Shown: piece by piece, positions 13,027-63,554 of the stretch
Layout: every line of letters begins with the position of its first letter
Position numbering within the stretch: the first letter of the stretch is position 1
IMG/VR virus record: IMGVR_UViG_3300025030_000041
Coordinates: 1 to 64,000 of that record
Direction: 5' to 3' (one strand)
Length of the DNA stretch: 64,000 bases
The notes under the pieces: generated by a model
What the model saw: the letters and a program-made list of their open reading frames with translations, nothing else
Databases searched by the model: none
What the model was told of the DNA's origin: nothing
Made by a program: the position numbers and the translations under genes

Positions 13027-13209
13027 TATTTTTTAATTATTATTTTTTTGTTCTTATATTATTTATTAGAATTATCTGTTTAATTAAATTATTTTTTTTA
13101 ATCACTAAACGTATTTTCCGTTTTTCAAAATTTTAAAATGAATCTTTAAATATTTTTAACTAAATATATTAATAATCAATATTTTAAAGTTAATTGAATA
13201 TATATAATA

Positions 13210-13597
13210 GTTAGCAACAATAATTAGAACTGCGGTTCTGGAACAGTATAAGGTAATGTTTTAGAATAGCTTAGTTCCCATTCATCAGTTCCTTTTCCTA
13301 TTAATGTTGGGATGTGTCCAATCATATTAAATATCAACTGTTTTGGTTCAACAAAAACTACATCACTTCCAATGCAAGTGTGTTTTACTTCAACAATAGC
13401 GTCTTCACCCAACATGAGGTTTGTCTGGTTTTTGATTGACCAAAACTTAGTTCCTTTGGGAATTAATCTATTTTCTCCTATTTTAATTTCGTTCATAAAA
13501 TATTATTGTTGCTAACGAGGTATATATGCAATACCCTATTAAAGTTTATACTAAATTTTTATTTTTTGTGCAAGGGTACTGCATATATACCCAACCA
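13210..13597 (-). mobile_element. Integron-like gene cassette carrying ORF 13224-13496
   Basis: Perfect 15-bp inverted ends gttagcaacaataat (13210-13224) / attattgttgctaac (13502-13516), then hairpin ggtatatatgcaataccct...agggtactgcatatatacc. Confidence 0.75.
13224..13496 (-). CDS. Cassette-borne hypothetical protein
   Basis: ORF track; exactly fills the space between the inverted ends. Confidence 0.75.
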   Translation of the reverse strand: MNEIKIGENRLIPKGTKFWSIKNQTNLMLGEDAIVEVKHTCIGSDVVFVEPKQLIFNMIGHIPTLIGKGTDEWELSYSKTLPYTVPEPQF

Positions 13598-13616
13598 TTA
13601 GGTGCAATAAAAATTA

Positions 13617-13861: not shown

Positions 13862-13963
13862 GCTTATAACAGCACCTAACAAAAATGGCTGCTACAAGCA
13901 TTGGTTTATAAATTGAAGTTTTATTTAAGCAGTCACTTCAGTTAGCTGCAAAAACATTATATG
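13862..13963 (-). mobile_element. attC-like hairpin
   Basis: gcttataac, arm gcacctaacaaaaatggctgct ... arm agcagtcacttcagttagctgc, aaaac-attatatg (GTT mutated to ATT). Confidence 0.75.
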
Positions 13964-15417: not shown

Positions 15418-15543
15418 ATGAAAGACATGAATACAAAAAAAATTATTAAAAAACGTATAATTGAAAAACAAGAAAAAGTTTTTGATATTGAAGTAAAAGA
15501 TAGTCACCATTATTTTTTAGAAAACGGAGTGATTAGCCATAAT
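15418..15543 (+). mobile_element. Split intein C-fragment (42 aa)
   Basis: Basic N-terminus, block F VFDIEV, HN followed by Ser. Confidence 0.9.
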
Positions 15544-16524
15544 TCAGGTGGAATGTATGAAGCAACTAAGCAAGGCGGCGGGTGTTTAATACCAGGGACT
15601 AAGATATATACATTCAATAATGTATTAAAATCAATAGAAGGTGTTGAGTCTGGTGATTATGTTAAAACCTTATGTGGATATAAAGAAGTTTTAGAAACAT
15701 ATACATTTGAAAAATCTACTATAAAAATAGAATTTGAAGACACCACAAATATAATATGTTCAGAAGACCATCGTTTTTTAATTTCAGGAGACTATACAAT
15801 TGAAAGTAATTGGAAAAAAGCTAAAGACTTAGCTAATAATGAAAATATTTTAAAAATTGAAAATAATAATATTTTCAATTTAAAAATTAAAAATATTAAT
15901 CATTTATATACACAAAAAGTTCATGATATTAGTGTTAAAGATGTACATCATTATATATCTGAAACTGGTATAATAAATCATAATTCAGGAAATACCTATT
16001 CTGCATCAACTATTTTATTTTTATCTAAGTCATCTCTTAAAGAGGACGGCCAAACTAAAACGGGAATTGTAGTAAGATCTAAAACACAAAAAAATCGATT
16101 AGCTAAACCAATTGATATAGAATTCCATATTAGTCATATTAGCGGAATGAATCCGTATGTTGGATTACAAGATTATATTAGTTGGGAAAATTGTGGAGTA
16201 GTTAGAGGTACTCTACTTACTAAAAAAGAATTTGAAAAAGATAAGTCAAATAACCAAAAAACATATCATGAATTCGAACACAATAATGAAAAGTATTATG
16301 TAATTCCGTCTGATAAAGCTAGAAATATAGTTATAAGAGACGGATGTAAAGAAGTTCCATTTAAAAAACTATTTACATCAGAAGTATTTACAGAAAATGT
16401 TATTAAAGAATTAGATGAAAAAGTAATACGACCTAAATTTAAATATGATAAAATTAAAGACTTATTATCTAATGAATTAACTGAAGTTTTTGGTGATACT
16501 ACAGACGATGAATCAGACGAATAA
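15418..16524 (+). CDS. uvsX: UvsX C-fragment: intein C part, 13-aa extein, second mini-intein, C-extein
   Basis: VFDIEV...ISHN/S, then SGGMYEATKQGGG, CLIPG...INHN/S, then SGNTYSASTILFL...KNRLAKP. Confidence 0.92.
   Translation: MKDMNTKKIIKKRIIEKQEKVFDIEVKDSHHYFLENGVISHNSGGMYEATKQGGGCLIPGTKIYTFNNVLKSIEGVESGDYVKTLCGYKEVLETYTFEKSTIKIEFEDTTNIICSEDHRFLISGDYTIESNWKKAKDLANNENILKIENNNIFNLKIKNINHLYTQKVHDISVKDVHHYISETGIINHNSGNTYSASTILFLSKSSLKEDGQTKTGIVVRSKTQKNRLAKPIDIEFHISHISGMNPYVGLQDYISWENCGVVRGTLLTKKEFEKDKSNNQKTYHEFEHNNEKYYVIPSDKARNIVIRDGCKEVPFKKLFTSEVFTENVIKELDEKVIRPKFKYDKIKDLLSNELTEVFGDTTDDESDE
15583..15984 (+). mobile_element. Contiguous mini-intein (134 aa)
   Basis: C1 CLIPGTKI, block B CSEDH, block F VHDISV, terminal HN followed by Ser; no endonuclease domain. 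Confidence 0.9.
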
Positions 16525-21498: not shown

Positions 21499-24400
21499 AT
21501 GGATATATCAAAACTTTTTTTCTTTAATAAAAACGGTGAAAATATAAATTTCACGTTTAATTCGTCTTTAAATAAGTATGAGAGTACTATTTATTTTGAT
21601 AAATTATCAAGTTCTCTATTTGATAATGAAAATCTTTATATTCTAGAAAAGTCCGGTGACTCATATATTTATCCTACTTTTACTGCTACCCAATCCTTAA
21701 AATTTAAATGGAAAACTCTATCTGATAAAGAGAATATCTTTTTATATGATATTGAAACAAGTAATGAAGATAATAACGACTATATTATAACAAAAGACGA
21801 AGTTTTAATATCATATGACCCATCGTTATATGGTGATAAAATTCCATTAAATATTAATATAGCATTTAACCCCTTGGATGAAACTAATTATGAAAGAGTA
21901 TTAGAAATATACTTGCTTGATATAGCTTCACCTGGAACATCCGATTTAATTGGAGAAATAAGTTTTTATGGTGAAGGAATAGACGAAGACGAAAGATATA
22001 GAATATGGTTAGCTAATTTTGGTATTAAATTTAATAGAGAGGATGCTTTAATATTAAAGGATTATGATATAAAAGAGGCTTTACCAAATTGGGAAATTAT
22101 TAATAACAAGCGGAAAGAAGCATTATTAACTAGGCCAGAGGTATACCCATATGTTGGAACATATAAAGGATTGACTAATATTATTAATTTTTTAGGGTTC
22201 AGAGATTTTTTATCAGTAAAAGAGTATTGGCAAAATAAAAACACAGATTCGCCATACTTTAATAAATTTACATTAATTGATATAAGTGATTTATTAGATG
22301 ATGGAAAAATAAATTCTATTGATTTAACTACATATAATAATAACGTTAAATTTACTCCTGAATTTAAAAAAACCGGATTATTAGGATTATATTATAAAAT
22401 AACAGATACAACGGGTGTAGAAGATGCTGACGGAATACCAGAGGTAGTACGAACTACTGAATTCAGCAATGACGAGATTTTATATAAACTTAATAGATTA
22501 AAAGATAAATTAAAAGATGAAATACTTCCAATTAATGTTAAAATTATAGATATAGTTGGTGAGTTTTTATTTTTTCAAAAATTTTCAATTAGAACTTGGA
22601 ATAATAGAGTTGAAATAAAAGATTTTCAAATTAACGAAAATTATGATATATCAGTTTATCCTTTAAATGATACTGAAGCATATTTATATGATCTTAAACC
22701 TCTATTAATAAAAATAAATCAATCTTCTACTAATGTAAATTTCGGAAATTATATATTTAATAATAGCCAGTCAAATCCATATGACTGGTCTCAAAAATAC
22801 CCGCCAACTGATATTCCTTTATTAATTGAATCAATAAAGACTTTTTATAATGAAATACAACAGTCTAAAAAAGATGGATTAAATGAACCATTACCGTGGA
22901 ACTTCGGAGATGAACCTGAAAATATAATTGGATGTCCAGTTATATTTAAAGTTAAGTTTGACGAAATTACATGGGATATATTATCAAATTCAACATGGGA
23001 TAGTCTAGACGATTTTTATACATGGGATACTATAAACTTTAAATCAATTTATGAAATAGAATGGAATATAAGTAAAAAAATCGGAACACCTTACTCTTTT
23101 ACTTATCGAGGATATATAAAAGATTTACATACATTACCTCATTTTTTACCATATGAAGGAGAATATGACGTCTTTGCTAAACTATATGATCTTAACTCTG
23201 GTCATAGCATAAATTATGAAAATAAAATTATAAATGTTAAAAAAATAGAACCTGAAATAATCGCATTATCTAGAATTGAAGATAAATTTGGCGATACTTG
23301 GGATGACTTATCTAATGTAACATGGGATGAAATAGAATCATCATACTGGTATAATCCTATTGTAAACATAGTTAATCAAAATAATAACGAGATAGATTTA
23401 CAAAGAAATTTATACGAGTGGGATTTTTATAAAGATAAAATAAAAGATGCTAAAATATTTAATGACGACACTTTTATATATGAATCCTTAAATACTAGCC
23501 TGCATTCTCTTAAAAATTTATATGGTATACCTAAAAAAGGAGGAAGTGATGTATACGAATGGACATGGGATGATTTTGAAAATGCAACATGGGATGACTT
23601 ATTTCATATGAAATGGTATCATATGGTATATCACTCTGATTTTTTAGCAGGTTTTCTTATTAAGAAACTTCCAAGAAAAGGAGATATTATACAAATGAAT
23701 AAATATTCAGATTTTGTATTTCAAACTACTATGCTAACTTTACAAGATGCAATCGATGAATTGAATTTATCTAGCCATAATGGAATATCGTTATTTAAAT
23801 ATGAGGTTCAAAGTTATCATAAAAAATATAAAGTAACATTAACAAAAAGTACAACTGATTTTACATATGACTTAACGATTAATGAATCTAATATTATATA
23901 TATTGCAACTCCTTTACAAGATATAAATGAAATTAGAGACGCATTGATTAATCTAATTAATAATGAAATTACCCAACATGTTACGGCAATTAGTGCTTCA
24001 AATGATAGTTTTTTAATAATCGGTGATGTGGAAGAAGATGACTATATATTATCAGTAACTAGCCCAAGTTTAATAGATTTTGAATTAATACAAGATCCTG
24101 GTCCATTTATTAGTGCGACTGCAAAAGACTTTGGAAAAGAAAGTTATGTAATTATAAATTATATTTCATCTGGCGATGACGACGACTCTAGTCCATTCTC
24201 ACCAAGAACCTCTAATTTCTTAGAAGGCAACAAATACTCGTATAACGAACCTATTTGGATTTATAATAAATCTCAAATTGAATCTTTAAATAATAAATAT
24301 ATAAGTCTAGATATTGAAAATTTATTTGTTGATGCACCATTTAGCGATATTGCTAATGGAAATACTAATAATATTCAGTATTGGATAGATAATAAATATA

Positions 24401-24804
24401 TTAAGCATAATACTGAAACTGATGAACAGACTGGATTTATACCGTCTATAGTAGATACAAATGTATTTAATTTAATACAGCTTAAAGTATATGAAGATTC
24501 GTTCATTATACCTAAATGGTGTCCGGTATTTTTTGTTATTAATAATGTTCCAGGTAAAACTGAATTTGTATGGACATTATATGATGAGGATAATAATAAA
24601 AAATTAATTCAGATTAAGGATGTTCCATTTTTTATATGGAGATTTAATGAATTAGGGCAGTATAGAATAGACGTACAAATTACAGATAATAAAGGAAATA
24701 TTTATAATAAAAGTTTTTCTAAATTTGTAAATGTTAAATCTAAAAATGATTATATTTCTTTTATAGAACGAGAAATTAATAAGCTTTCCAAATTAATTCT
24801 TTAA
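21499..24804 (+). CDS. Large virion structural protein (baseplate wedge-like) with TWD repeats
   Basis: AATAAATA upstream; GTYKGLTNIINFLG resembles baseplate wedge/tail-I motifs; PKD/Ig-like C-terminus. Confidence 0.6.
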   Translation: MDISKLFFFNKNGENINFTFNSSLNKYESTIYFDKLSSSLFDNENLYILEKSGDSYIYPTFTATQSLKFKWKTLSDKENIFLYDIETSNEDNNDYIITKDEVLISYDPSLYGDKIPLNINIAFNPLDETNYERVLEIYLLDIASPGTSDLIGEISFYGEGIDEDERYRIWLANFGIKFNREDALILKDYDIKEALPNWEIINNKRKEALLTRPEVYPYVGTYKGLTNIINFLGFRDFLSVKEYWQNKNTDSPYFNKFTLIDISDLLDDGKINSIDLTTYNNNVKFTPEFKKTGLLGLYYKITDTTGVEDADGIPEVVRTTEFSNDEILYKLNRLKDKLKDEILPINVKIIDIVGEFLFFQKFSIRTWNNRVEIKDFQINENYDISVYPLNDTEAYLYDLKPLLIKINQSSTNVNFGNYIFNNSQSNPYDWSQKYPPTDIPLLIESIKTFYNEIQQSKKDGLNEPLPWNFGDEPENIIGCPVIFKVKFDEITWDILSNSTWDSLDDFYTWDTINFKSIYEIEWNISKKIGTPYSFTYRGYIKDLHTLPHFLPYEGEYDVFAKLYDLNSGHSINYENKIINVKKIEPEIIALSRIEDKFGDTWDDLSNVTWDEIESSYWYNPIVNIVNQNNNEIDLQRNLYEWDFYKDKIKDAKIFNDDTFIYESLNTSLHSLKNLYGIPKKGGSDVYEWTWDDFENATWDDLFHMKWYHMVYHSDFLAGFLIKKLPRKGDIIQMNKYSDFVFQTTMLTLQDAIDELNLSSHNGISLFKYEVQSYHKKYKVTLTKSTTDFTYDLTINESNIIYIATPLQDINEIRDALINLINNEITQHVTAISASNDSFLIIGDVEEDDYILSVTSPSLIDFELIQDPGPFISATAKDFGKESYVIINYISSGDDDDSSPFSPRTSNFLEGNKYSYNEPIWIYNKSQIESLNNKYISLDIENLFVDAPFSDIANGNTNNIQYWIDNKYIKHNTETDEQTGFIPSIVDTNVFNLIQLKVYEDSFIIPKWCPVFFVINNVPGKTEFVWTLYDEDNNKKLIQIKDVPFFIWRFNELGQYRIDVQITDNKGNIYNKSFSKFVNVKSKNDYISFIEREINKLSKLIL

Positions 24805-46590: not shown

Positions 46591-46641
46591 AAATATTTTA
46601 ATATATTAAAACTATTTCTTATTTTTGTATTAAATATAACG
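46591..46641 (+). promoter_or_regulatory. 51-bp promoter platform (copy 1) ending in the cassette core TAAC
   Basis: 49/51 identical to 49677-49727; contains TAttTTTG (Bacteroidota -7 element). Confidence 0.8.
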
Positions 46642-46730
46642 GCCGGTACTTTATGCCCAGTTTGCCATACGGACACTTAACATTTAGCAGTAGAGTTGAT
46701 GACAAACTTGTATAAAGTAATTGTTATAAA
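46633..46730 (+). mobile_element. attC-like hairpin
   Basis: aatataac-ggccgg-tactttatgcccagtttgccat ... atgacaaacttgtataaagta-att-gttataaa. Confidence 0.75.
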
Positions 46731-46798: not shown

Positions 46799-47212
46799 AT
46801 GACGACAAATAATTTAAGAGAAAAAACAGTTTTACAAATTACAGAAATTGTAAAAGAATATTGTAAAACTGCAGAACCAACAAATGTGTATTTGGCTTTC
46901 AAAAAAGAGGTGGACAAACCATTGATGATTGAAACAAAATACCCAATACCTAATGAAAATATTACAGTAATGATTTCGGATATTAGAAAAGATTGGCAAT
47001 TACCATTAGCAGGAACAAAGGATATTGGAAACCCAAAATTAAAAGAGATGAGCCGAGAAGATTTTGAAAAAACATTTGATATATTATCATATACTGTACA
47101 GGAAGAAAGCCAAATAATTATGAAAGTAATTGATAAATTGGGATTACATAAATGGGAACATGAAGGAAAATTAAAACAGTTTCATTACTATCAAGGAAGT
47201 TATAACAAATAG
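46799..47212 (+). CDS. Cassette-borne hypothetical protein
   Basis: ORF track; follows the hairpin. Confidence 0.7.
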   Translation: MTTNNLREKTVLQITEIVKEYCKTAEPTNVYLAFKKEVDKPLMIETKYPIPNENITVMISDIRKDWQLPLAGTKDIGNPKLKEMSREDFEKTFDILSYTVQEESQIIMKVIDKLGLHKWEHEGKLKQFHYYQGSYNK

Positions 47213-47276
47213 GGTGTAGGCTTTTTATTTATTAAATTTTTTAAAAGAAATGATAATACGACGTGATAAAGTAAGC

Positions 47277-47340
47277 CTTTTTGCCGAGCCTGTGTTATAA
47301 GGCGAAGCGAACAGTTGGTTTTTCGCCAATGGCTTATAAT
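47277..47340 (+). mobile_element. Half attC-like site plus 47-bp empty mini-cassette
   Basis: tttttgccgagcctgt-gttataag...cttataat; no ORF between the inverted cores. Confidence 0.55.
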
Positions 47341-47460
47341 GGTGTCAGGCTTGGCGAAGTGATTAAACCTGAAGCTAAATAGAATAACTAAACTTTAAAA
47401 TTAAGAACAAATGACAAATAGAATTACTGAACATTCATTTTGCCAAACACATGTTAGTGG
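47333..47460 (+). mobile_element. attC-like hairpin containing the start codon of ORF 47411
   Basis: cttataat-ggtgtca-ggcttggcgaagtg ... cattttgccaaacac-at-gttagtgg. Confidence 0.7.
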
Positions 47461-47746
47461 CAGTTTATCTTTGGAAACGATTGCTGATTATGTTACAAAA
47501 AAAGATTTATCTGTGCATAAAAAAATATGTAATTTGTGGTTAAAATCAGGAAACAAAGCAGAAGATTTTCCTAAACTACCGCCTTGTTGGATGGATGTTG
47601 AAATAACATTAAAAAATGGTAAAAAATATAAATCTTTTTTAGTGAGTATAAATAATTGTGGTGATACTCAATTCGTGATTAATAGAATGTTTAAAGAAAG
47701 GATTTATTTAGATATGGATGAAGTTGTTAGTTGGGAGTTCGTTTAA
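47411..47746 (+). CDS. Cassette-borne hypothetical protein
   Basis: Ends gttagtggcagttta / taaattgcaactagc are near-complementary. Confidence 0.7.
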   Translation: MTNRITEHSFCQTHVSGSLSLETIADYVTKKDLSVHKKICNLWLKSGNKAEDFPKLPPCWMDVEITLKNGKKYKSFLVSINNCGDTQFVINRMFKERIYLDMDEVVSWEFV

Positions 47747-47808
47747 ATTGCAACTAGCAGTTTTGCGTATAAAAAATCGTTTTAATGTTTTTTATACGAT
47801 GTTAGCAG
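47744..47808 (+). mobile_element. Short attC-like hairpin
   Basis: caactagc-agttttg-cgtataaaaaa ... ttttttatacg-at-gttagcag; perfect 11-bp stem. Confidence 0.7.
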
Positions 47809-47873
47809 TATGTATTATTTTTGTTTTTACCTTATTAAAAAAATAACTATGGAAGTATTTATCAAAAAAACAT

Positions 47874-48217: not shown

Positions 48218-48787
48218 ATGAAATTTAACGACTGGTTTACTACTAGATTAATTGTTAATAAGTTTCCATTACCTTCTGAAATTTTAAAAGCACACTATGA
48301 CTACATTATTAATGTTAGTGATGAATACTCAGGTGAGTGCCATGACACTGCAATGGAAAGAGGTATTAAATATTTTTGGTTTCCAATGAATGAGCGAGTA
48401 GGTGATATGGGTTTAAACAGTTTATATGCAGCATTAAAAATAATATGGCAAGTCGAACAAGAGGGAGCTTCTGTATTACTTCATTGTCATGCTGGAGTTA
48501 ATAGAAGTCCAACAGTGAGAGATGCGTACTATTTTTTACGTACAAAAAAACATAGAGAAGAAATTGTGTTTGATGAAGAAATTGAAGAACGATTAACTGA
48601 ATGGTTAAATTTGGGTAAATCAATTAATGGAAAAAATAACATGCTACTTGAAAACATTAGAAAAGGACACTTACCCTCTATTAATAAAATGGAATCTTTT
48701 TTGAGACATTGTGAAGTTCAATTTAAAAAAGAAGAAACTGATAACAGCGGCGGACTTGACAAGTGTAAAGGTAATGCTGGGATTTAG
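48218..48787 (+). CDS. Dual-specificity/tyrosine phosphatase
   Basis: HCHAGVNRS (CX5R). Confidence 0.88.
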   Translation: MKFNDWFTTRLIVNKFPLPSEILKAHYDYIINVSDEYSGECHDTAMERGIKYFWFPMNERVGDMGLNSLYAALKIIWQVEQEGASVLLHCHAGVNRSPTVRDAYYFLRTKKHREEIVFDEEIEERLTEWLNLGKSINGKNNMLLENIRKGHLPSINKMESFLRHCEVQFKKEETDNSGGLDKCKGNAGI

Positions 48788-48847
48788 CAATTAAAAGAAT
48801 CAGTAAGTATTTTGAAATAAATAAATTTATAAAAAATATTTTTTTGT

Positions 48848-49597
48848 GTGAAACCTAAAAAAAAGAAATTAACCCGAGAAGATGAACAAGAATTATTAGA
48901 AATAACTAATAAAACATTTAATCCAGACATTTTATCAAGTATACATATTGAAATAAAATGTAAATCAGAAAATCAAAAGAAATTATTAAATTCAATAAAA
49001 GAAAATGATGTTACTATATGTATAGGACCAGCTGGATGTGGTAAAACTATATTATCATGTGCGGAAGCTTTAATTTTATTAAAAACACATAGAGACATAT
49101 ACTCAAAAATTGTTTTAACTAAATCTATAACTCAACTTCGTAATGAAGATATAGGAATATTACCAGGGGATGAGAAAGATAAATTAAAATTATATATGGC
49201 ATCATATATGGATTCATTTAATAAATTAATTGGTGAGTACTTAACTAATAAATTAATTGAGTTAGGCCTAATTAAATTTGAAGCTCTAGGTACATTAAGA
49301 GGACGGTCTTTTGATAATGTTATTCTAATAAGTGATGAATTTCAAAATGTTAATCATGATAACGCTAAAACTCTATTAACTAGAATGTCACAAAATAGTA
49401 AATTTATTATTTTAGGGGATACTGACCAAATAGATATTAAAAATAAAAAAGATAGTTCTTTAGAGTTTATTCATAAAAAAATAAATGAAAATCCAATGGA
49501 TGGGGTTGGAGCAGTCGAATTAACAAATAGTGATATTGTAAGACATAAATTAACTTCATATTTTATAAATTTATTTAACGAACTTAAAACTTTATAG
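48848..49597 (+). CDS. phoH: PhoH-like ATPase
   Basis: GPAGCGKT, GILPG, LRGRSF, DEFQN, LTR, GDTDQID. Confidence 0.93.
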   Translation: MKPKKKKLTREDEQELLEITNKTFNPDILSSIHIEIKCKSENQKKLLNSIKENDVTICIGPAGCGKTILSCAEALILLKTHRDIYSKIVLTKSITQLRNEDIGILPGDEKDKLKLYMASYMDSFNKLIGEYLTNKLIELGLIKFEALGTLRGRSFDNVILISDEFQNVNHDNAKTLLTRMSQNSKFIILGDTDQIDIKNKKDSSLEFIHKKINENPMDGVGAVELTNSDIVRHKLTSYFINLFNELKTL

Positions 49598-49676
49598 CGT
49601 AATCATTTATTATTTAGTAGATTGATTATCAATTAATTATATTTACTTGTTATATTTAGTTCAAAAATAAAGTACT

Positions 49677-49727
49677 AAATATTTTAATATATCAAAACTA
49701 TTTCTTATTTTTGTATTGAATATAACG
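49677..49727 (+). promoter_or_regulatory. 51-bp promoter platform (copy 2) with upstream TATCAATTAATTATAT box
   Basis: 49/51 identical to 46591-46641; box at 49627-49642. Confidence 0.8.
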
Positions 49728-49818
49728 TTTTGCAGGTAGGCGATAGTGAGGCTTACCACAAAGTTTAAATCAAAGCACTCAGGCTCATAACGGCAATATC
49801 GCCTACCTGATGTTAGGT
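49720..49818 (+). mobile_element. attC-like hairpin
   Basis: atataac-gttttg-caggtaggcgata ... tatcgcctacctg-at-gttaggt; perfect 13-bp stem. Confidence 0.8.
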
Positions 49819-49864: not shown

Positions 49865-50092
49865 ATGAAAATTAAGAAACTTATCAGCCAACACCGCAGG
49901 GATTTCACCGCCTTAATGGAATGTGAATTTTGCCAACATCAAGAAATGGATAATTCAGGTTATGATGACCGATATTATCACGACAATGTAATACCAAATA
50001 TGAAGTGTAAAAAATGCGGTGAATCAACGATAAGTAAAGGCGGTGAAATTGAAAGGACCCCAACTAAATATCCAGAGGGATTCCAAATTTGA
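49865..50092 (+). CDS. Cassette-borne Zn-ribbon protein
   Basis: CEFC...CKKC. Confidence 0.75.
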   Translation: MKIKKLISQHRRDFTALMECEFCQHQEMDNSGYDDRYYHDNVIPNMKCKKCGESTISKGGEIERTPTKYPEGFQI

Positions 50093-62873: not shown

Positions 62874-63116
62874 ATGATAACAGAAAAAGAATACTTAAAA
62901 GCAAAAATGATTGTTGAAGCATATGAATGTGAGCAATTGAATAAACCTGCTAGTATAAGCCATATGAAGTGCTGCGACAACCAAGATATAGAAATATTTT
63001 ATAAAAACACCAGTAATAAGGATGGGAGTGGAAGAATGGGTGTTACTCATAAGATATTTAAATGCAAGAATTGTGTTATGCAATCGGCTTTTATTTGTCA
63101 AATGTTTAATAATTAA
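62874..63116 (+). CDS. Hypothetical protein, probably cassette-derived
   Basis: EQLNKPASISH resembles the hairpin-encoded QLNISEVSH of the next gene. Confidence 0.55.
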   Translation: MITEKEYLKAKMIVEAYECEQLNKPASISHMKCCDNQDIEIFYKNTSNKDGSGRMGVTHKIFKCKNCVMQSAFICQMFNN

Positions 63117-63141: not shown

Positions 63142-63429
63142 ATGTTAGAAAACGAAAACTTGAATGAACCACAAAAAACGCAATTGAATATAAGTGAGGT
63201 TAGCCACAATTGTATTTGTTGCGGAAAAGAAATAAAGAAACTTGATGGACTGCCAAAAGATAAGGATTGGGAAGGTATGTGGAATGGTGGAATAGTTGAA
63301 AAGATAAGTGCTGGGTATGGCAGTTTACTTGATGGAGATATGTATGTTTTGGCTATATGCGATGACTGTGTAAAGTTGAAACAGCTAAAATACGTTGGTA
63401 ACTATATGTTCCCAGACAATTGTGACTAA
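63142..63429 (+). CDS. Cassette-borne Zn-finger protein (start MLENENL)
   Basis: CICC...CDDC; bounded by gttagccacaattgt (63199) / acaattgtgactaac (63416), 14/15 complementary. Confidence 0.7.
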   Translation: MLENENLNEPQKTQLNISEVSHNCICCGKEIKKLDGLPKDKDWEGMWNGGIVEKISAGYGSLLDGDMYVLAICDDCVKLKQLKYVGNYMFPDNCD

Positions 63430-63554
63430 CTGATGACACTAACAGTCAGGTGGGGATTAAATGCACCGTACTTTCACTTGACGATAAGCTTCATTAGACA
63501 CAAGATAGCTTCAATGTGACACAAGCCCCCACTTGCTGTTATTGTATGTTATGG
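63424..63554 (+). mobile_element. attC-like hairpin
   Basis: gactaac-tgatg-acactaacagtcaggtgggg ... ccccacttgctgttattgt-at-gttatgg. Confidence 0.78.

What the first reader, a model, noticed from the sequence alone, without database searches (positions are those of the whole stretch)
47333..47470. Cassette hairpin lies 5' of its gene and encodes the protein N-terminus
Seen: every hairpin has the same spacer asymmetry relative to transcription (5-7 nt on the TAAC side, 2-3 nt on the GTTA side). The ATG of ORF 47411 lies inside the hairpin loop, and the frame reads through the arm and core (MTNRITEHSFCQTH-VSGS). ORF 63142 does the same (..TQLNISE-VSHN), and 62874 has a degenerate version (EQLNKPASISH). 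Known: classical cassettes carry attC at the 3' end of the gene. Inference: if crossover is at the TAAC, as the platform repeat suggests, these genes are inverted relative to classical cassettes. The recombination site then also serves as translation-initiation region and coding sequence, and could explain recurrent QLN...VS leader peptides on unrelated proteins.
Basis: partly seen in the sequence, partly recalled or inferred. Interest (0 to 1): 0.72.

Follow-up and report, generated by a model that had tools for sequence, protein, structure and literature searches.

The report
Phage integron-like site encoding protein starts
The flagged 120 bases are a worn copy of a folded-DNA recombination site that marks gene cassettes in a 246-kb phage. 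Unlike in classical integrons, it sits in front of its gene, so it also carries the start codon and first about 18 codons.

Summary
Window 47337-47456 belongs to a large family of 50-130 nt hairpins: TAAC, 4-6 nt, a 14-bp covarying stem, a variable loop, the stem, 1-2 nt, GTTA. A covariance model finds 27 copies in this 246-kb phage, all on the gene strand. It finds 275 in 80 related viral loci, all on the strand of a conserved Xer-like tyrosine recombinase and all but two upstream of it. Arrays end in a conserved site (TAAC + TATTATATATA) 40-60 nt before the recombinase gene. A triplicated cassette is bounded exactly by TAAC on both sides, so the unit is hairpin plus downstream gene.

Bacteroidota chromosomes carry the same recombinase and hairpin families in the classical layout, with the hairpin 8-25 nt after each gene and on the opposite strand.

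About 60% of long hairpins hold an ATG in the loop that opens the downstream ORF. Homologues of ORF 47411 carry different hairpin-encoded leaders, or none where no hairpin is present.

Caveats: this copy is eroded (TAAT, weak basal stem). ORF 63142 keeps only the 3' half. The recombinase lacks the IntI-specific domain. Recombination and start-codon use are inferred, not shown.

The parts
47337..47456 (+). attC-like hairpin element, eroded copy. TAAT 47337-47340; 5' arm 47346-47359; loop 47360-47437 holding the ATG at 47411; 3' arm 47438-47451; GTTA 47453-47456.
   Evidence: Covariance model R1, 73.8 bits, E 5e-11. 86% identity to Muminvirus and IMG/VR elements. The same hairpin type occurs in bacterial arrays.
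47457..47464 (+). Downstream box GTGGCAGT (family consensus KNNGYAGT). It pairs with the ATT box upstream of TAAC and encodes ..SGS.
   Evidence: Position counts over 299 hairpins. Homology to other elements ends at +8.
47411..47746 (+). Cassette ORF of 111 aa, function unknown. Residues 1-18 are hairpin-encoded leader; the conserved body starts at LSLETIADY.
   Evidence: No Pfam or PHROG match.
47755..47804 (+). Mini-hairpin (about 48-nt class) that closes the cassette. Its TAAC has degenerated to TAGC (47755-47758).
   Evidence: R1 weak hit 47750-47809, 23.8 bits. Gene-body homology to L202/L203 ends at 47756-47764.
47203..47297 (+). Decayed hairpin. Its TAAC 47203-47206 overlaps the end of ORF 46799-47212. 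Its 3' arm plus GTTA (47279-47297) pairs with the 5' arm of the next element.
   Evidence: R1 14.1 bits. The same unit lies upstream of hairpin 158405 in the genome.
47298..47336 (+). 39-nt gene-less spacer between GTTA and TAAT, with its own small GGCGAA/TTCGCC hairpin.
46637..46726 (+). Short-class hairpin directly after a promoter-like repeat (46591-46640).
   Evidence: R1 53.5 bits. Repeat D7. 18 genome copies of the repeat.
49723..49815 (+). Short-class hairpin directly after a promoter-like repeat (49677-49726).
   Evidence: R1 69.4 bits. Folds with z -3.56.
13867..13959 (-). Hairpin upstream of ORF 13844-13617 (minus strand).
   Evidence: R1 52.7 bits.
13513..13600 (-). Hairpin upstream of ORF 13496-13224 (minus strand).
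   Evidence: R1 56.2 bits. Folds with z -3.74.
13191..13213 (-). attI-like site (TAAC + TATTATATATA) closing the minus-strand mini-array. No recombinase gene follows here.
   Evidence: Motif search. Compare with 36 recombinase loci.
63142..63209 (+). Leader remnant MLENENLNEPQKTQLNISEVSHN. The 3' arm and GTTA are kept; the 5' arm is missing.
   Evidence: No R1 hit. Sequence. The same leader type sits on ORF-47411 homologues elsewhere.
62874..62963 (+). Degenerate copy of the MITEKQYLK cassette leader. GTTA has mutated to AGTA.

Best explanation
The element is a decayed member of an attC-like family of structured recombination sites. The family belongs to an integron-like gene-cassette system of Bacteroidota and their phages.

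On one defined strand (S), each site folds as follows: an ATT box, TAAC, 4-6 unpaired nt, a 14-bp stem that ends in an invariant G.T, a variable loop, the stem, 1-2 nt, GTTA, and a YAGT box. Arrays of [hairpin + cargo] units end at a conserved attI-like site (TAAC followed by TATTATATATA). That site lies beside a roughly 270-aa XerA-like tyrosine recombinase with an intact catalytic set but no IntI-specific insertion.

[quoted passage not shown] A cassette would then be C-hairpin-GTTA-cargo-TAA.

In bacterial chromosomes the cargo gene is antisense to S, so the hairpin is 3' of the gene, as in classical integrons. In phages the cargo and the recombinase gene lie on S, so the hairpin is 5' of its gene. 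Because cassettes read towards the attI-like site, they cannot use a promoter there. Gene-less promoter-like cassettes supply transcription instead.

In the roughly 125-nt class the A-rich loop holds the start codon. The 3' arm, GTTA and YAGT are then translated, giving leaders such as ..L-x-x-x-x-V-S/I-G/S-S on unrelated proteins.

Shown: the family, its structure, its strand polarity, its link to the recombinase and the attI-like site, the cassette boundaries, and the co-occurrence of leader and hairpin. Inferred: catalysis on folded ssDNA, the cleaved bond, and use of the loop ATG.
For: Structure:
- 13 of 14 stem pairs show compensatory changes.
- On 98 sequences 97.2% of cells are paired, against 73.4% when shuffled. 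There are 388 double-change cells against 116, with 0 of 500 shuffles as high.
- The terminal G.T is present in 96 of 98.

Polarity:
- The genome has 27 copies, and inspected copies lie on the strand of their flanking ORFs.
- In 80 viral loci, all 275 hits lie on the recombinase strand and all but 2 lie upstream of it.
- An independent scanner gives 322 against 2.
- ORF content in the arrays is 119.5 kb on S against 19.1 kb on the other strand.

Platform:
- Two intact recombinases sit about 50 nt after a terminal TAAC.
- The attI-like motif is present in all 36 loci inspected.
- Further copies in this genome are followed by truncated recombinase starts, one cut at GATAA|C.

Boundaries:
- A three-copy cassette is identical exactly from TAAC to TAAC.

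Bacterial counterpart:
- The same recombinase family (41-48% identity) has hairpins downstream of it on the opposite strand, 8-25 nt after gene stops.
- The mirrored attI-like motif follows the recombinase stop codon.

DNA-level signal:
- G.T exceeds A.C on S, 281 against 81 in phages and 28 against 10 in bacteria.
- Bottom strands of classical attC sites show the same bias (Nivina 2016, PMC5027507).

Coding:
- 93 of 154 long hairpins have a loop ATG opening an ORF.
- L014 reads the same arm in another frame.
- The ORF-47411 family has at least 4 leader types, and leaderless members start at the junction.
- Hairpins overlie the starts in L202 and L203, and none is present in leaderless L204.
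- GenBank start codons of mumin gp006, gp013 and gp018 lie inside hairpins.
Against: - No experiment shows recombination.
- Only assembled contigs were available, so no cassette circles or junction reads could be seen.
- The recombinase lacks the I2/extra domain thought to enable hairpin recombination, and the sites lack extrahelical bases.
- Between genomes, homology blocks are hairpins alone or gene bodies alone. The body block runs from GTTA to the next TAAC. Something also exchanges sequence at the GTTA side.
- This particular copy, and its right-hand boundary, are mutated and probably immobile.
- Use of the loop ATG is unproven.
Confidence: 0.7

Rival explanations
1. The hairpins are primarily mRNA elements, such as 5' stabilisers, processing sites or translation-initiation clamps. 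In this reading cassettes shuffle only by homologous recombination between them, as proposed for promoter/stem-loop PeSL motifs of T4-type phages.
For: In phages the hairpins lie on the coding strand, often right after a promoter-like repeat. The start codon sits in an A-rich loop. G.U-compatible pairs are enriched. Isolated phages such as mumin carry hairpins but no such recombinase. PeSL precedent: PMC2839356, PMC4122927.
Against: The same strand-specific structure and G.T bias are conserved in bacterial arrays, where that strand is antisense to the genes. TAAC and GTTA are invariant. The hairpins are tightly linked to a recombinase and a conserved attI-like site. Cassette boundaries fall exactly at TAAC, including next to a non-hairpin partner. 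An added RNA-level role in phages is not excluded.
Confidence: 0.12
2. Classical orientation: each hairpin belongs to the gene upstream of it and crossover is at G|TTA. The overlap with the next gene's start would then be incidental.
For: Gene-body homology of ORF 47411 to L202 and L203 starts at GTTA (47452) and ends at the next TAAC-equivalent. The same gene body occurs with different hairpins. Stop codons of upstream genes often lie just before or within TAAC.
Against: The triplicated cassette carries its upstream hairpin, not the downstream one. One cargo gene always lies between the last hairpin and the attI-like site. The attI-like site carries TAAC at its junction on the same strand. 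Polarity relative to the bacterial arrays agrees with this.
Confidence: 0.08
3. A miniature transposable element, either MITE-like or a hairpin element of the IS200/IS605 type moved by an HUH transposase, that happens to insert at gene starts.
For: The element is about 125 nt with inverted-repeat-like arms. The same element occurs in unrelated genomes. A short conserved tetranucleotide lies at the boundary.
Against: No Y1 transposase is present in the genome. The element has a single long hairpin rather than two end hairpins. Copies are arranged in ordered, co-oriented arrays ending at a tyrosine recombinase. Stem sequences covary freely rather than being copies of one element.
Confidence: 0.03

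Closest known systems
Classical integrons (IntI, attI, attC cassette arrays)
   Same: Arrays of small cassettes are separated by imperfect hairpins whose only invariant letters are AAC...GTT. The hairpins have an unpaired central spacer and a variable terminal structure. G:T mispairs are enriched on one strand. A tyrosine recombinase gene lies beside a distinct non-hairpin site at one end of the array. One cargo lies between that site and the first hairpin. The bacterial relatives have the hairpin 3' of each gene.
   Different: The recombinase lacks the IntI-specific I2/extra domain (24 residues where VchIntIA has 70) and scores below the integron-integrase cut-offs. The hairpins have no extrahelical bases. 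In phages the cargo and the recombinase gene lie on the recombinogenic-like strand, so the site is 5' of the gene and is partly translated. Nivina 2016 states that this orientation has never been seen in integrons. Promoters are supplied by separate promoter-like cassettes.
attC clusters without integrase (CALINs) in phages, e.g. Polaribacter phage P12002L with DNA methyltransferase cassettes (Qi et al. 2023, PMC9892861)
   Same: Both involve Flavobacteriia phages with attC-like sites next to DNA methyltransferase genes. One P12002L site recombined with IntI1/attI1 in E. coli. My model gives weak hits beside the P12002L methyltransferase genes and strong ones in Flavobacterium phage mumin.
   Different: In the sections I read and searched, that study reports no cognate recombinase, no 5' position of the site, no overlap with coding sequence and no attI-like site. 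It treats odd orientations as mosaicism.
PeSL promoter/stem-loop motifs of T4-type phages (PMC2839356, PMC4122927)
   Same: These are repeated regulatory motifs that flank small ORFs in plastic regions of large phages and are proposed to shuffle cassettes. Here a promoter-like repeat often precedes a hairpin.
   Different: From the titles and abstracts, PeSLs are composite promoter/terminator motifs said to mediate modular shuffling. That shuffling is, to my knowledge, by homologous recombination; the papers were not read. Here stems covary, termini are invariant and a dedicated recombinase with an attI-like site is present.
Xer recombination of folded single-stranded DNA (CTX phage integration) and Xer-site (pdif) modules
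   Same: The recombinase is of Xer type; its nearest solved relatives are archaeal XerA proteins. CTX phage, from my own knowledge, is a precedent for a Xer enzyme acting on a hairpin of single-stranded DNA.
   Different: Those systems use host XerCD at dif-like sites and move whole phages or modules. They do not form ordered arrays of hairpin-bounded cassettes with an element-encoded recombinase.

Membership tests
Integron | Integrase of the IntI clade carrying the additional domain (I2 helix) | tested here: not met
   Aligned to VchIntIA (2a3v) in two blocks, with 24 residues opposite 70. TIGR02249 scores 169.8 and 135.2 against a cut-off of 265. The best model is XerA-type, also below its cut-off.
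Integron | attC: imperfect hairpin with conserved AAC/GTT R box, L box, unpaired central spacer and variable terminal structure | tested here: met
   TAAC/GTTA are invariant. The stem is 14 bp and covaries. The internal loop is 4-5 nt against 1 nt. Loop length gives classes of about 48, 85 and 125 nt.
Integron | attC: extrahelical bases on the arm opposite the AAC | tested here: not met
   Bulge columns are empty in 97 of 98 aligned sites.
Integron | Excess of G:T mispairs on the recombinogenic (bottom) strand | tested here: met
   281 against 81 in phages and 28 against 10 in bacteria. Compare 1.24 against 0.39 per site in Nivina 2016.
Integron | attI site adjacent to the integrase gene at the head of the array | tested here: met
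   A conserved TAAC+TATTATATATA lies 40-60 nt upstream of the recombinase ATG in all 36 loci inspected. Its mirror image follows the stop codon in bacteria. Only presence was tested, not function.
Integron | Cassette ORF reads away from attI, with attC at its 3' end | tested here: not met
   In phage arrays the ORFs lie on the hairpin-sense strand and read towards the attI-like site. The feature is met in the bacterial relatives.
Integron | Recombination of the folded bottom strand between A and C of AAC | not testable with these tools
   Only indirect evidence: cassette boundaries at TAAC and a recombinase remnant cut at GATAA|C.
PeSL (T4-type phages) | Near-identical early promoter plus stem-loop flanking ORFs | tested here: inconclusive
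   A promoter-like repeat has 18 copies in the genome, and many of them are followed by a hairpin. But most hairpins lack it, and stems differ in sequence.
IS200/IS605-type hairpin elements | Y1 HUH transposase and subterminal hairpins at both ends | tested here: not met
   PF01797 is absent from the genome. Each unit has a single hairpin.
Xer/dif-type systems | Xer-family recombinase acting on a roughly 28-bp two-arm site | tested here: inconclusive
   The recombinase is most similar to XerA. The folded site offers two duplex arms around an unpaired centre, but no dif-like duplex site was sought.

The most novel reading that the evidence does not exclude
A second lineage of integron-like systems is widespread in Bacteroidota and in hundreds of uncultivated phages. 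It works with an I2-less Xer-type recombinase on folded hairpins that lack extrahelical bases. Its phage form has inverted the cargo, so the recombination site has become a portable translation-initiation region and N-terminal leader, with separate mobile promoter cassettes.
Probability: 0.5. Interest if true: 0.9.

Novelty: new variant of a known kind. Interest (0 to 1): 0.82.

Why it matters
- Integron biology holds that the I2 helix was the innovation that allowed hairpin recombination (Escudero 2020, abstract seen). It also holds that cassettes facing the other way are never seen (Nivina 2016). A large natural system that breaks both rules would make those ideas directly testable.
- It would show that large phages run their own cassette-capture platforms. 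Here the cassettes are ORFans, and DNA methyltransferases in relatives, which are likely counter-defence genes.
- It explains why unrelated small phage proteins share N-terminal leaders.
- It warns that start-codon calls and protein clustering in Bacteroidota phages are confounded by translated recombination sites.

Tried and rejected
- Rfam gave no match at gathering thresholds.
- No tRNA genes were found.
- The element has a single copy in the genome at the sequence level.
- Sequencing runs were groundwater metagenomes held only as assembled contigs. Contigs break at the repeats, and the few short-sided joints are unreliable, so no circle or deletion junctions could be read.
- A second contig of the same phage is 100% identical, so there is no presence/absence polymorphism to use.
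- No Y1 transposase is present.
- No isolated phage in the GenBank set has a close homologue of the recombinase; the best is 36% identical.
- Cassette proteins have no informative Pfam or PHROG match. One (49865-50092) hits only an unknown-function PHROG.
- Eight literature searches found no description of this recombinase-and-hairpin system (one search retrieved only the PeSL papers). Cury 2016 dismissed recombinases near attC that lack the IntI C-terminal domain, because each had fewer than 3 sites nearby.
- Chance was rejected. Markov-shuffled genomes give 0-5 scanner hits on one strand, against 18 and 7 on the two strands of the real genome.

Full report
**Context.** The window is the first 64 kb of a 246,115-bp IMG/VR virus record (26% G+C, estimated 92% complete). 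It encodes a portal protein, DNA polymerase, DnaB-like helicase, DNA ligase and an SbcC-like protein, so it is a large phage. The source is a groundwater metagenome.

**The observation.** ORF 47411-47746 starts at an ATG lying between two partly complementary arms, 47346-47359 and 47438-47451. It is read through the 3' arm and GTTA (47453-47456) as MTNRITEHSFCQTHVSGS.

The 5' arm prefers an orphan 3' arm just upstream, 47279-47297. The element begins with TAAT rather than TAAC.

Even so, the same 128 nt are 86% identical to a stretch of Flavobacterium siphophages of the genus Muminvirus. There the stretch lies between two DNA methyltransferase genes, with the downstream ATG at the same offset of 75. 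The proteins are unrelated after residue 18.

A pattern scan found the element upstream of other methyltransferase genes in IMG/VR contigs. In one of them (L014) a 1-nt indel puts the conserved arm in a different reading frame. The conservation is therefore at the nucleotide level.

**A family.**
- A script found about 25 hairpins in the genome, against 0-5 per strand in Markov-shuffled controls. Their form is TAAC, 4-7 nt, stem, loop, stem, 1-3 nt, GTTA.
- An alignment of 22 copies gives a 14-bp stem in which 13 pairs show compensatory changes.
- A covariance model finds 27 copies in the genome, and inspected copies lie on the strand of their flanking ORFs. Five strong and two weak copies lie in the window.
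- On 98 sequences from many contigs, 97.2% of cells pair, against 73.4% in shuffles. Double changes number 388 against 116. The terminal G.T is essentially invariant, and bulge columns are empty.
- Flanking boxes are conserved: ATT at positions -8 to -6 before TAAC, and YAGT at the 5th to 8th bases after GTTA.
- Lengths fall into three classes: about 48, 80-95 and 110-135 nt.

**Link to a recombinase.** The genome has two tyrosine recombinases of 267 and 271 aa, 51% identical to each other. Each lies directly downstream of, and co-oriented with, a hairpin array, about 50 nt after a terminal TAAC.

IMG/VR holds 217 relatives. In 80 loci the model finds 275 hairpins. All are on the recombinase strand and all but two are upstream of it. 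My independent scanner gives 322 against 2.

Every one of the 36 loci inspected has TAAC followed by TATTATATATA 40-60 nt before the recombinase ATG. This genome has further copies of that site at other array ends. Three are followed by recombinase remnants of 14-23 codons, one of them cut at GATAA|C. One copy lies in the window, at 13191-13213 on the minus strand.

**Cassette boundaries.** One cassette (MITEKQYLK..) occurs three times. The copies are identical exactly from the TAAC in front of the hairpin to the next TAAC. Beyond those points the flanks are unrelated. One flank is the recombinase-proximal site, which is not a hairpin. One cargo gene always lies between the last hairpin and that site.

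**Bacterial counterpart.**
- The same recombinase family (41-48% identity) is common in Bacteroidota genomes.
- There the model's hits lie downstream of the recombinase and on the opposite strand.
- Genes are on the recombinase strand, and each is followed within 8-25 nt by a hairpin.
- The cargo is diverse.
- The mirrored motif TATATA..A|GTTA follows the recombinase stop codon.
- The very hairpin type found at 47337 occurs in such arrays.

This is the classical integron layout, with the model's strand in the role of the bottom strand. In phages, both the cargo and the recombinase gene are inverted relative to the sites.

The excess of G.T over A.C appositions stays on the same strand in both settings: 281 against 81 in phages and 28 against 10 in bacteria. 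Bottom strands of attC sites show the same signature (PMC5027507). This argues for a DNA-level rather than an mRNA-level constraint.

**Not an IntI.** The nearest solved structures are archaeal XerA proteins. Against VchIntIA, 24 residues stand opposite the 70 that include the IntI-specific domain. The integron-integrase models are not reached. The sites also lack extrahelical bases.

**Coding.**
- 93 of 154 long hairpins have a loop ATG that opens an ORF of at least 35 codons through the 3' arm. Across all length classes, 136 hairpins have such an ORF. GTT is an in-frame codon in 87 of these, and the other two frames account for 33 and 16.
- In this genome, all nine such long-class loop ORFs found by the strict scanner use the GTT frame.
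- Homologues of ORF 47411 share a body starting at LSLETIADY. They carry at least four unrelated leader types ending in VSGS. Some have no leader and start at the junction.
- Two leader-bearing homologues have a hairpin over the start codon. A leaderless homologue has none.
- The leader of ORF 63142 matches a type seen on those homologues, but its 5' arm is gone.

**Unexplained.** Between genomes, homology blocks are hairpins alone, or gene bodies alone running from GTTA to the next TAAC. Occasional recombination of the other strand, or exchange on both arms, could explain this. Neither was tested.

**Prior work.** Qi et al. 2023 reported attC-like sites beside methyltransferase genes in Polaribacter phage P12002L. 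One of those sites was active with IntI1. My model hits that phage weakly and Flavobacterium phage mumin strongly. In the library searched I found no description of the recombinase, the attI-like site, the inverted cargo or the translated site. The library does not cover everything published.

Noticed in passing
window 46591-46640 and 49577-49726; 18 copies genome-wide: A gene-less unit of about 160 nt recurs through the genome. It consists of an 86-nt hairpin, then a promoter-like stretch containing TATTTTTG (which fits the Bacteroidetes -7 box TAnnTTTG), and ends in TAAC. It looks like a mobile promoter cassette feeding the arrays. Contig depth there is about 16 times the flanks.
   Followed up: partly
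genome 68588-68697 (+), 108900-109002 (-), 161156-161264 (+); outside the window: attI-like sites are followed by recombinase gene remnants of only 14-23 codons. One is cut at GATAA|C. This suggests repeated loss of the recombinase from older array ends.
   Followed up: partly
window 63436-63541 (+): A G+C-rich hairpin of a different sequence type (TAACAG, a GGGG arm, a CCCC arm, CTGTTA) lies just after ORF 63142-63429. It gives only a weak model hit of 20 bits. Its outer pairing is symmetric rather than asymmetric.
   Followed up: partly
window 15473-15548 and 15914-15989 (inside ORF 15418-16524): A 76-nt direct repeat, 71% identical, lies within one ORF. It encodes ..HHY..E.G.I..HNSG-like motifs reminiscent of intein or Hint C-terminal blocks.
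   Followed up: no
window 22969-23629 (ORF 21499-24804, 1101 aa): A TWDD/TWDE-type peptide motif is repeated in tandem within the largest protein of the window. That protein matches only an unknown-function PHROG.
   Followed up: no
window 48218-49597: A dual-specificity phosphatase gene and a PhoH-like ATPase gene lie inside the hairpin-bounded region. The 3' end of the PhoH-like gene overlaps a decayed TAAC-hairpin.
   Followed up: partly
genome 143855-143953, 151977-152072, 187038-187133 (-): Another repeat family lies on the minus strand: TAACTAGTCTAG, an AGGAGCTCCT palindrome, and then GTTA. My simple scanner picked it up but the covariance model did not.
   Followed up: no
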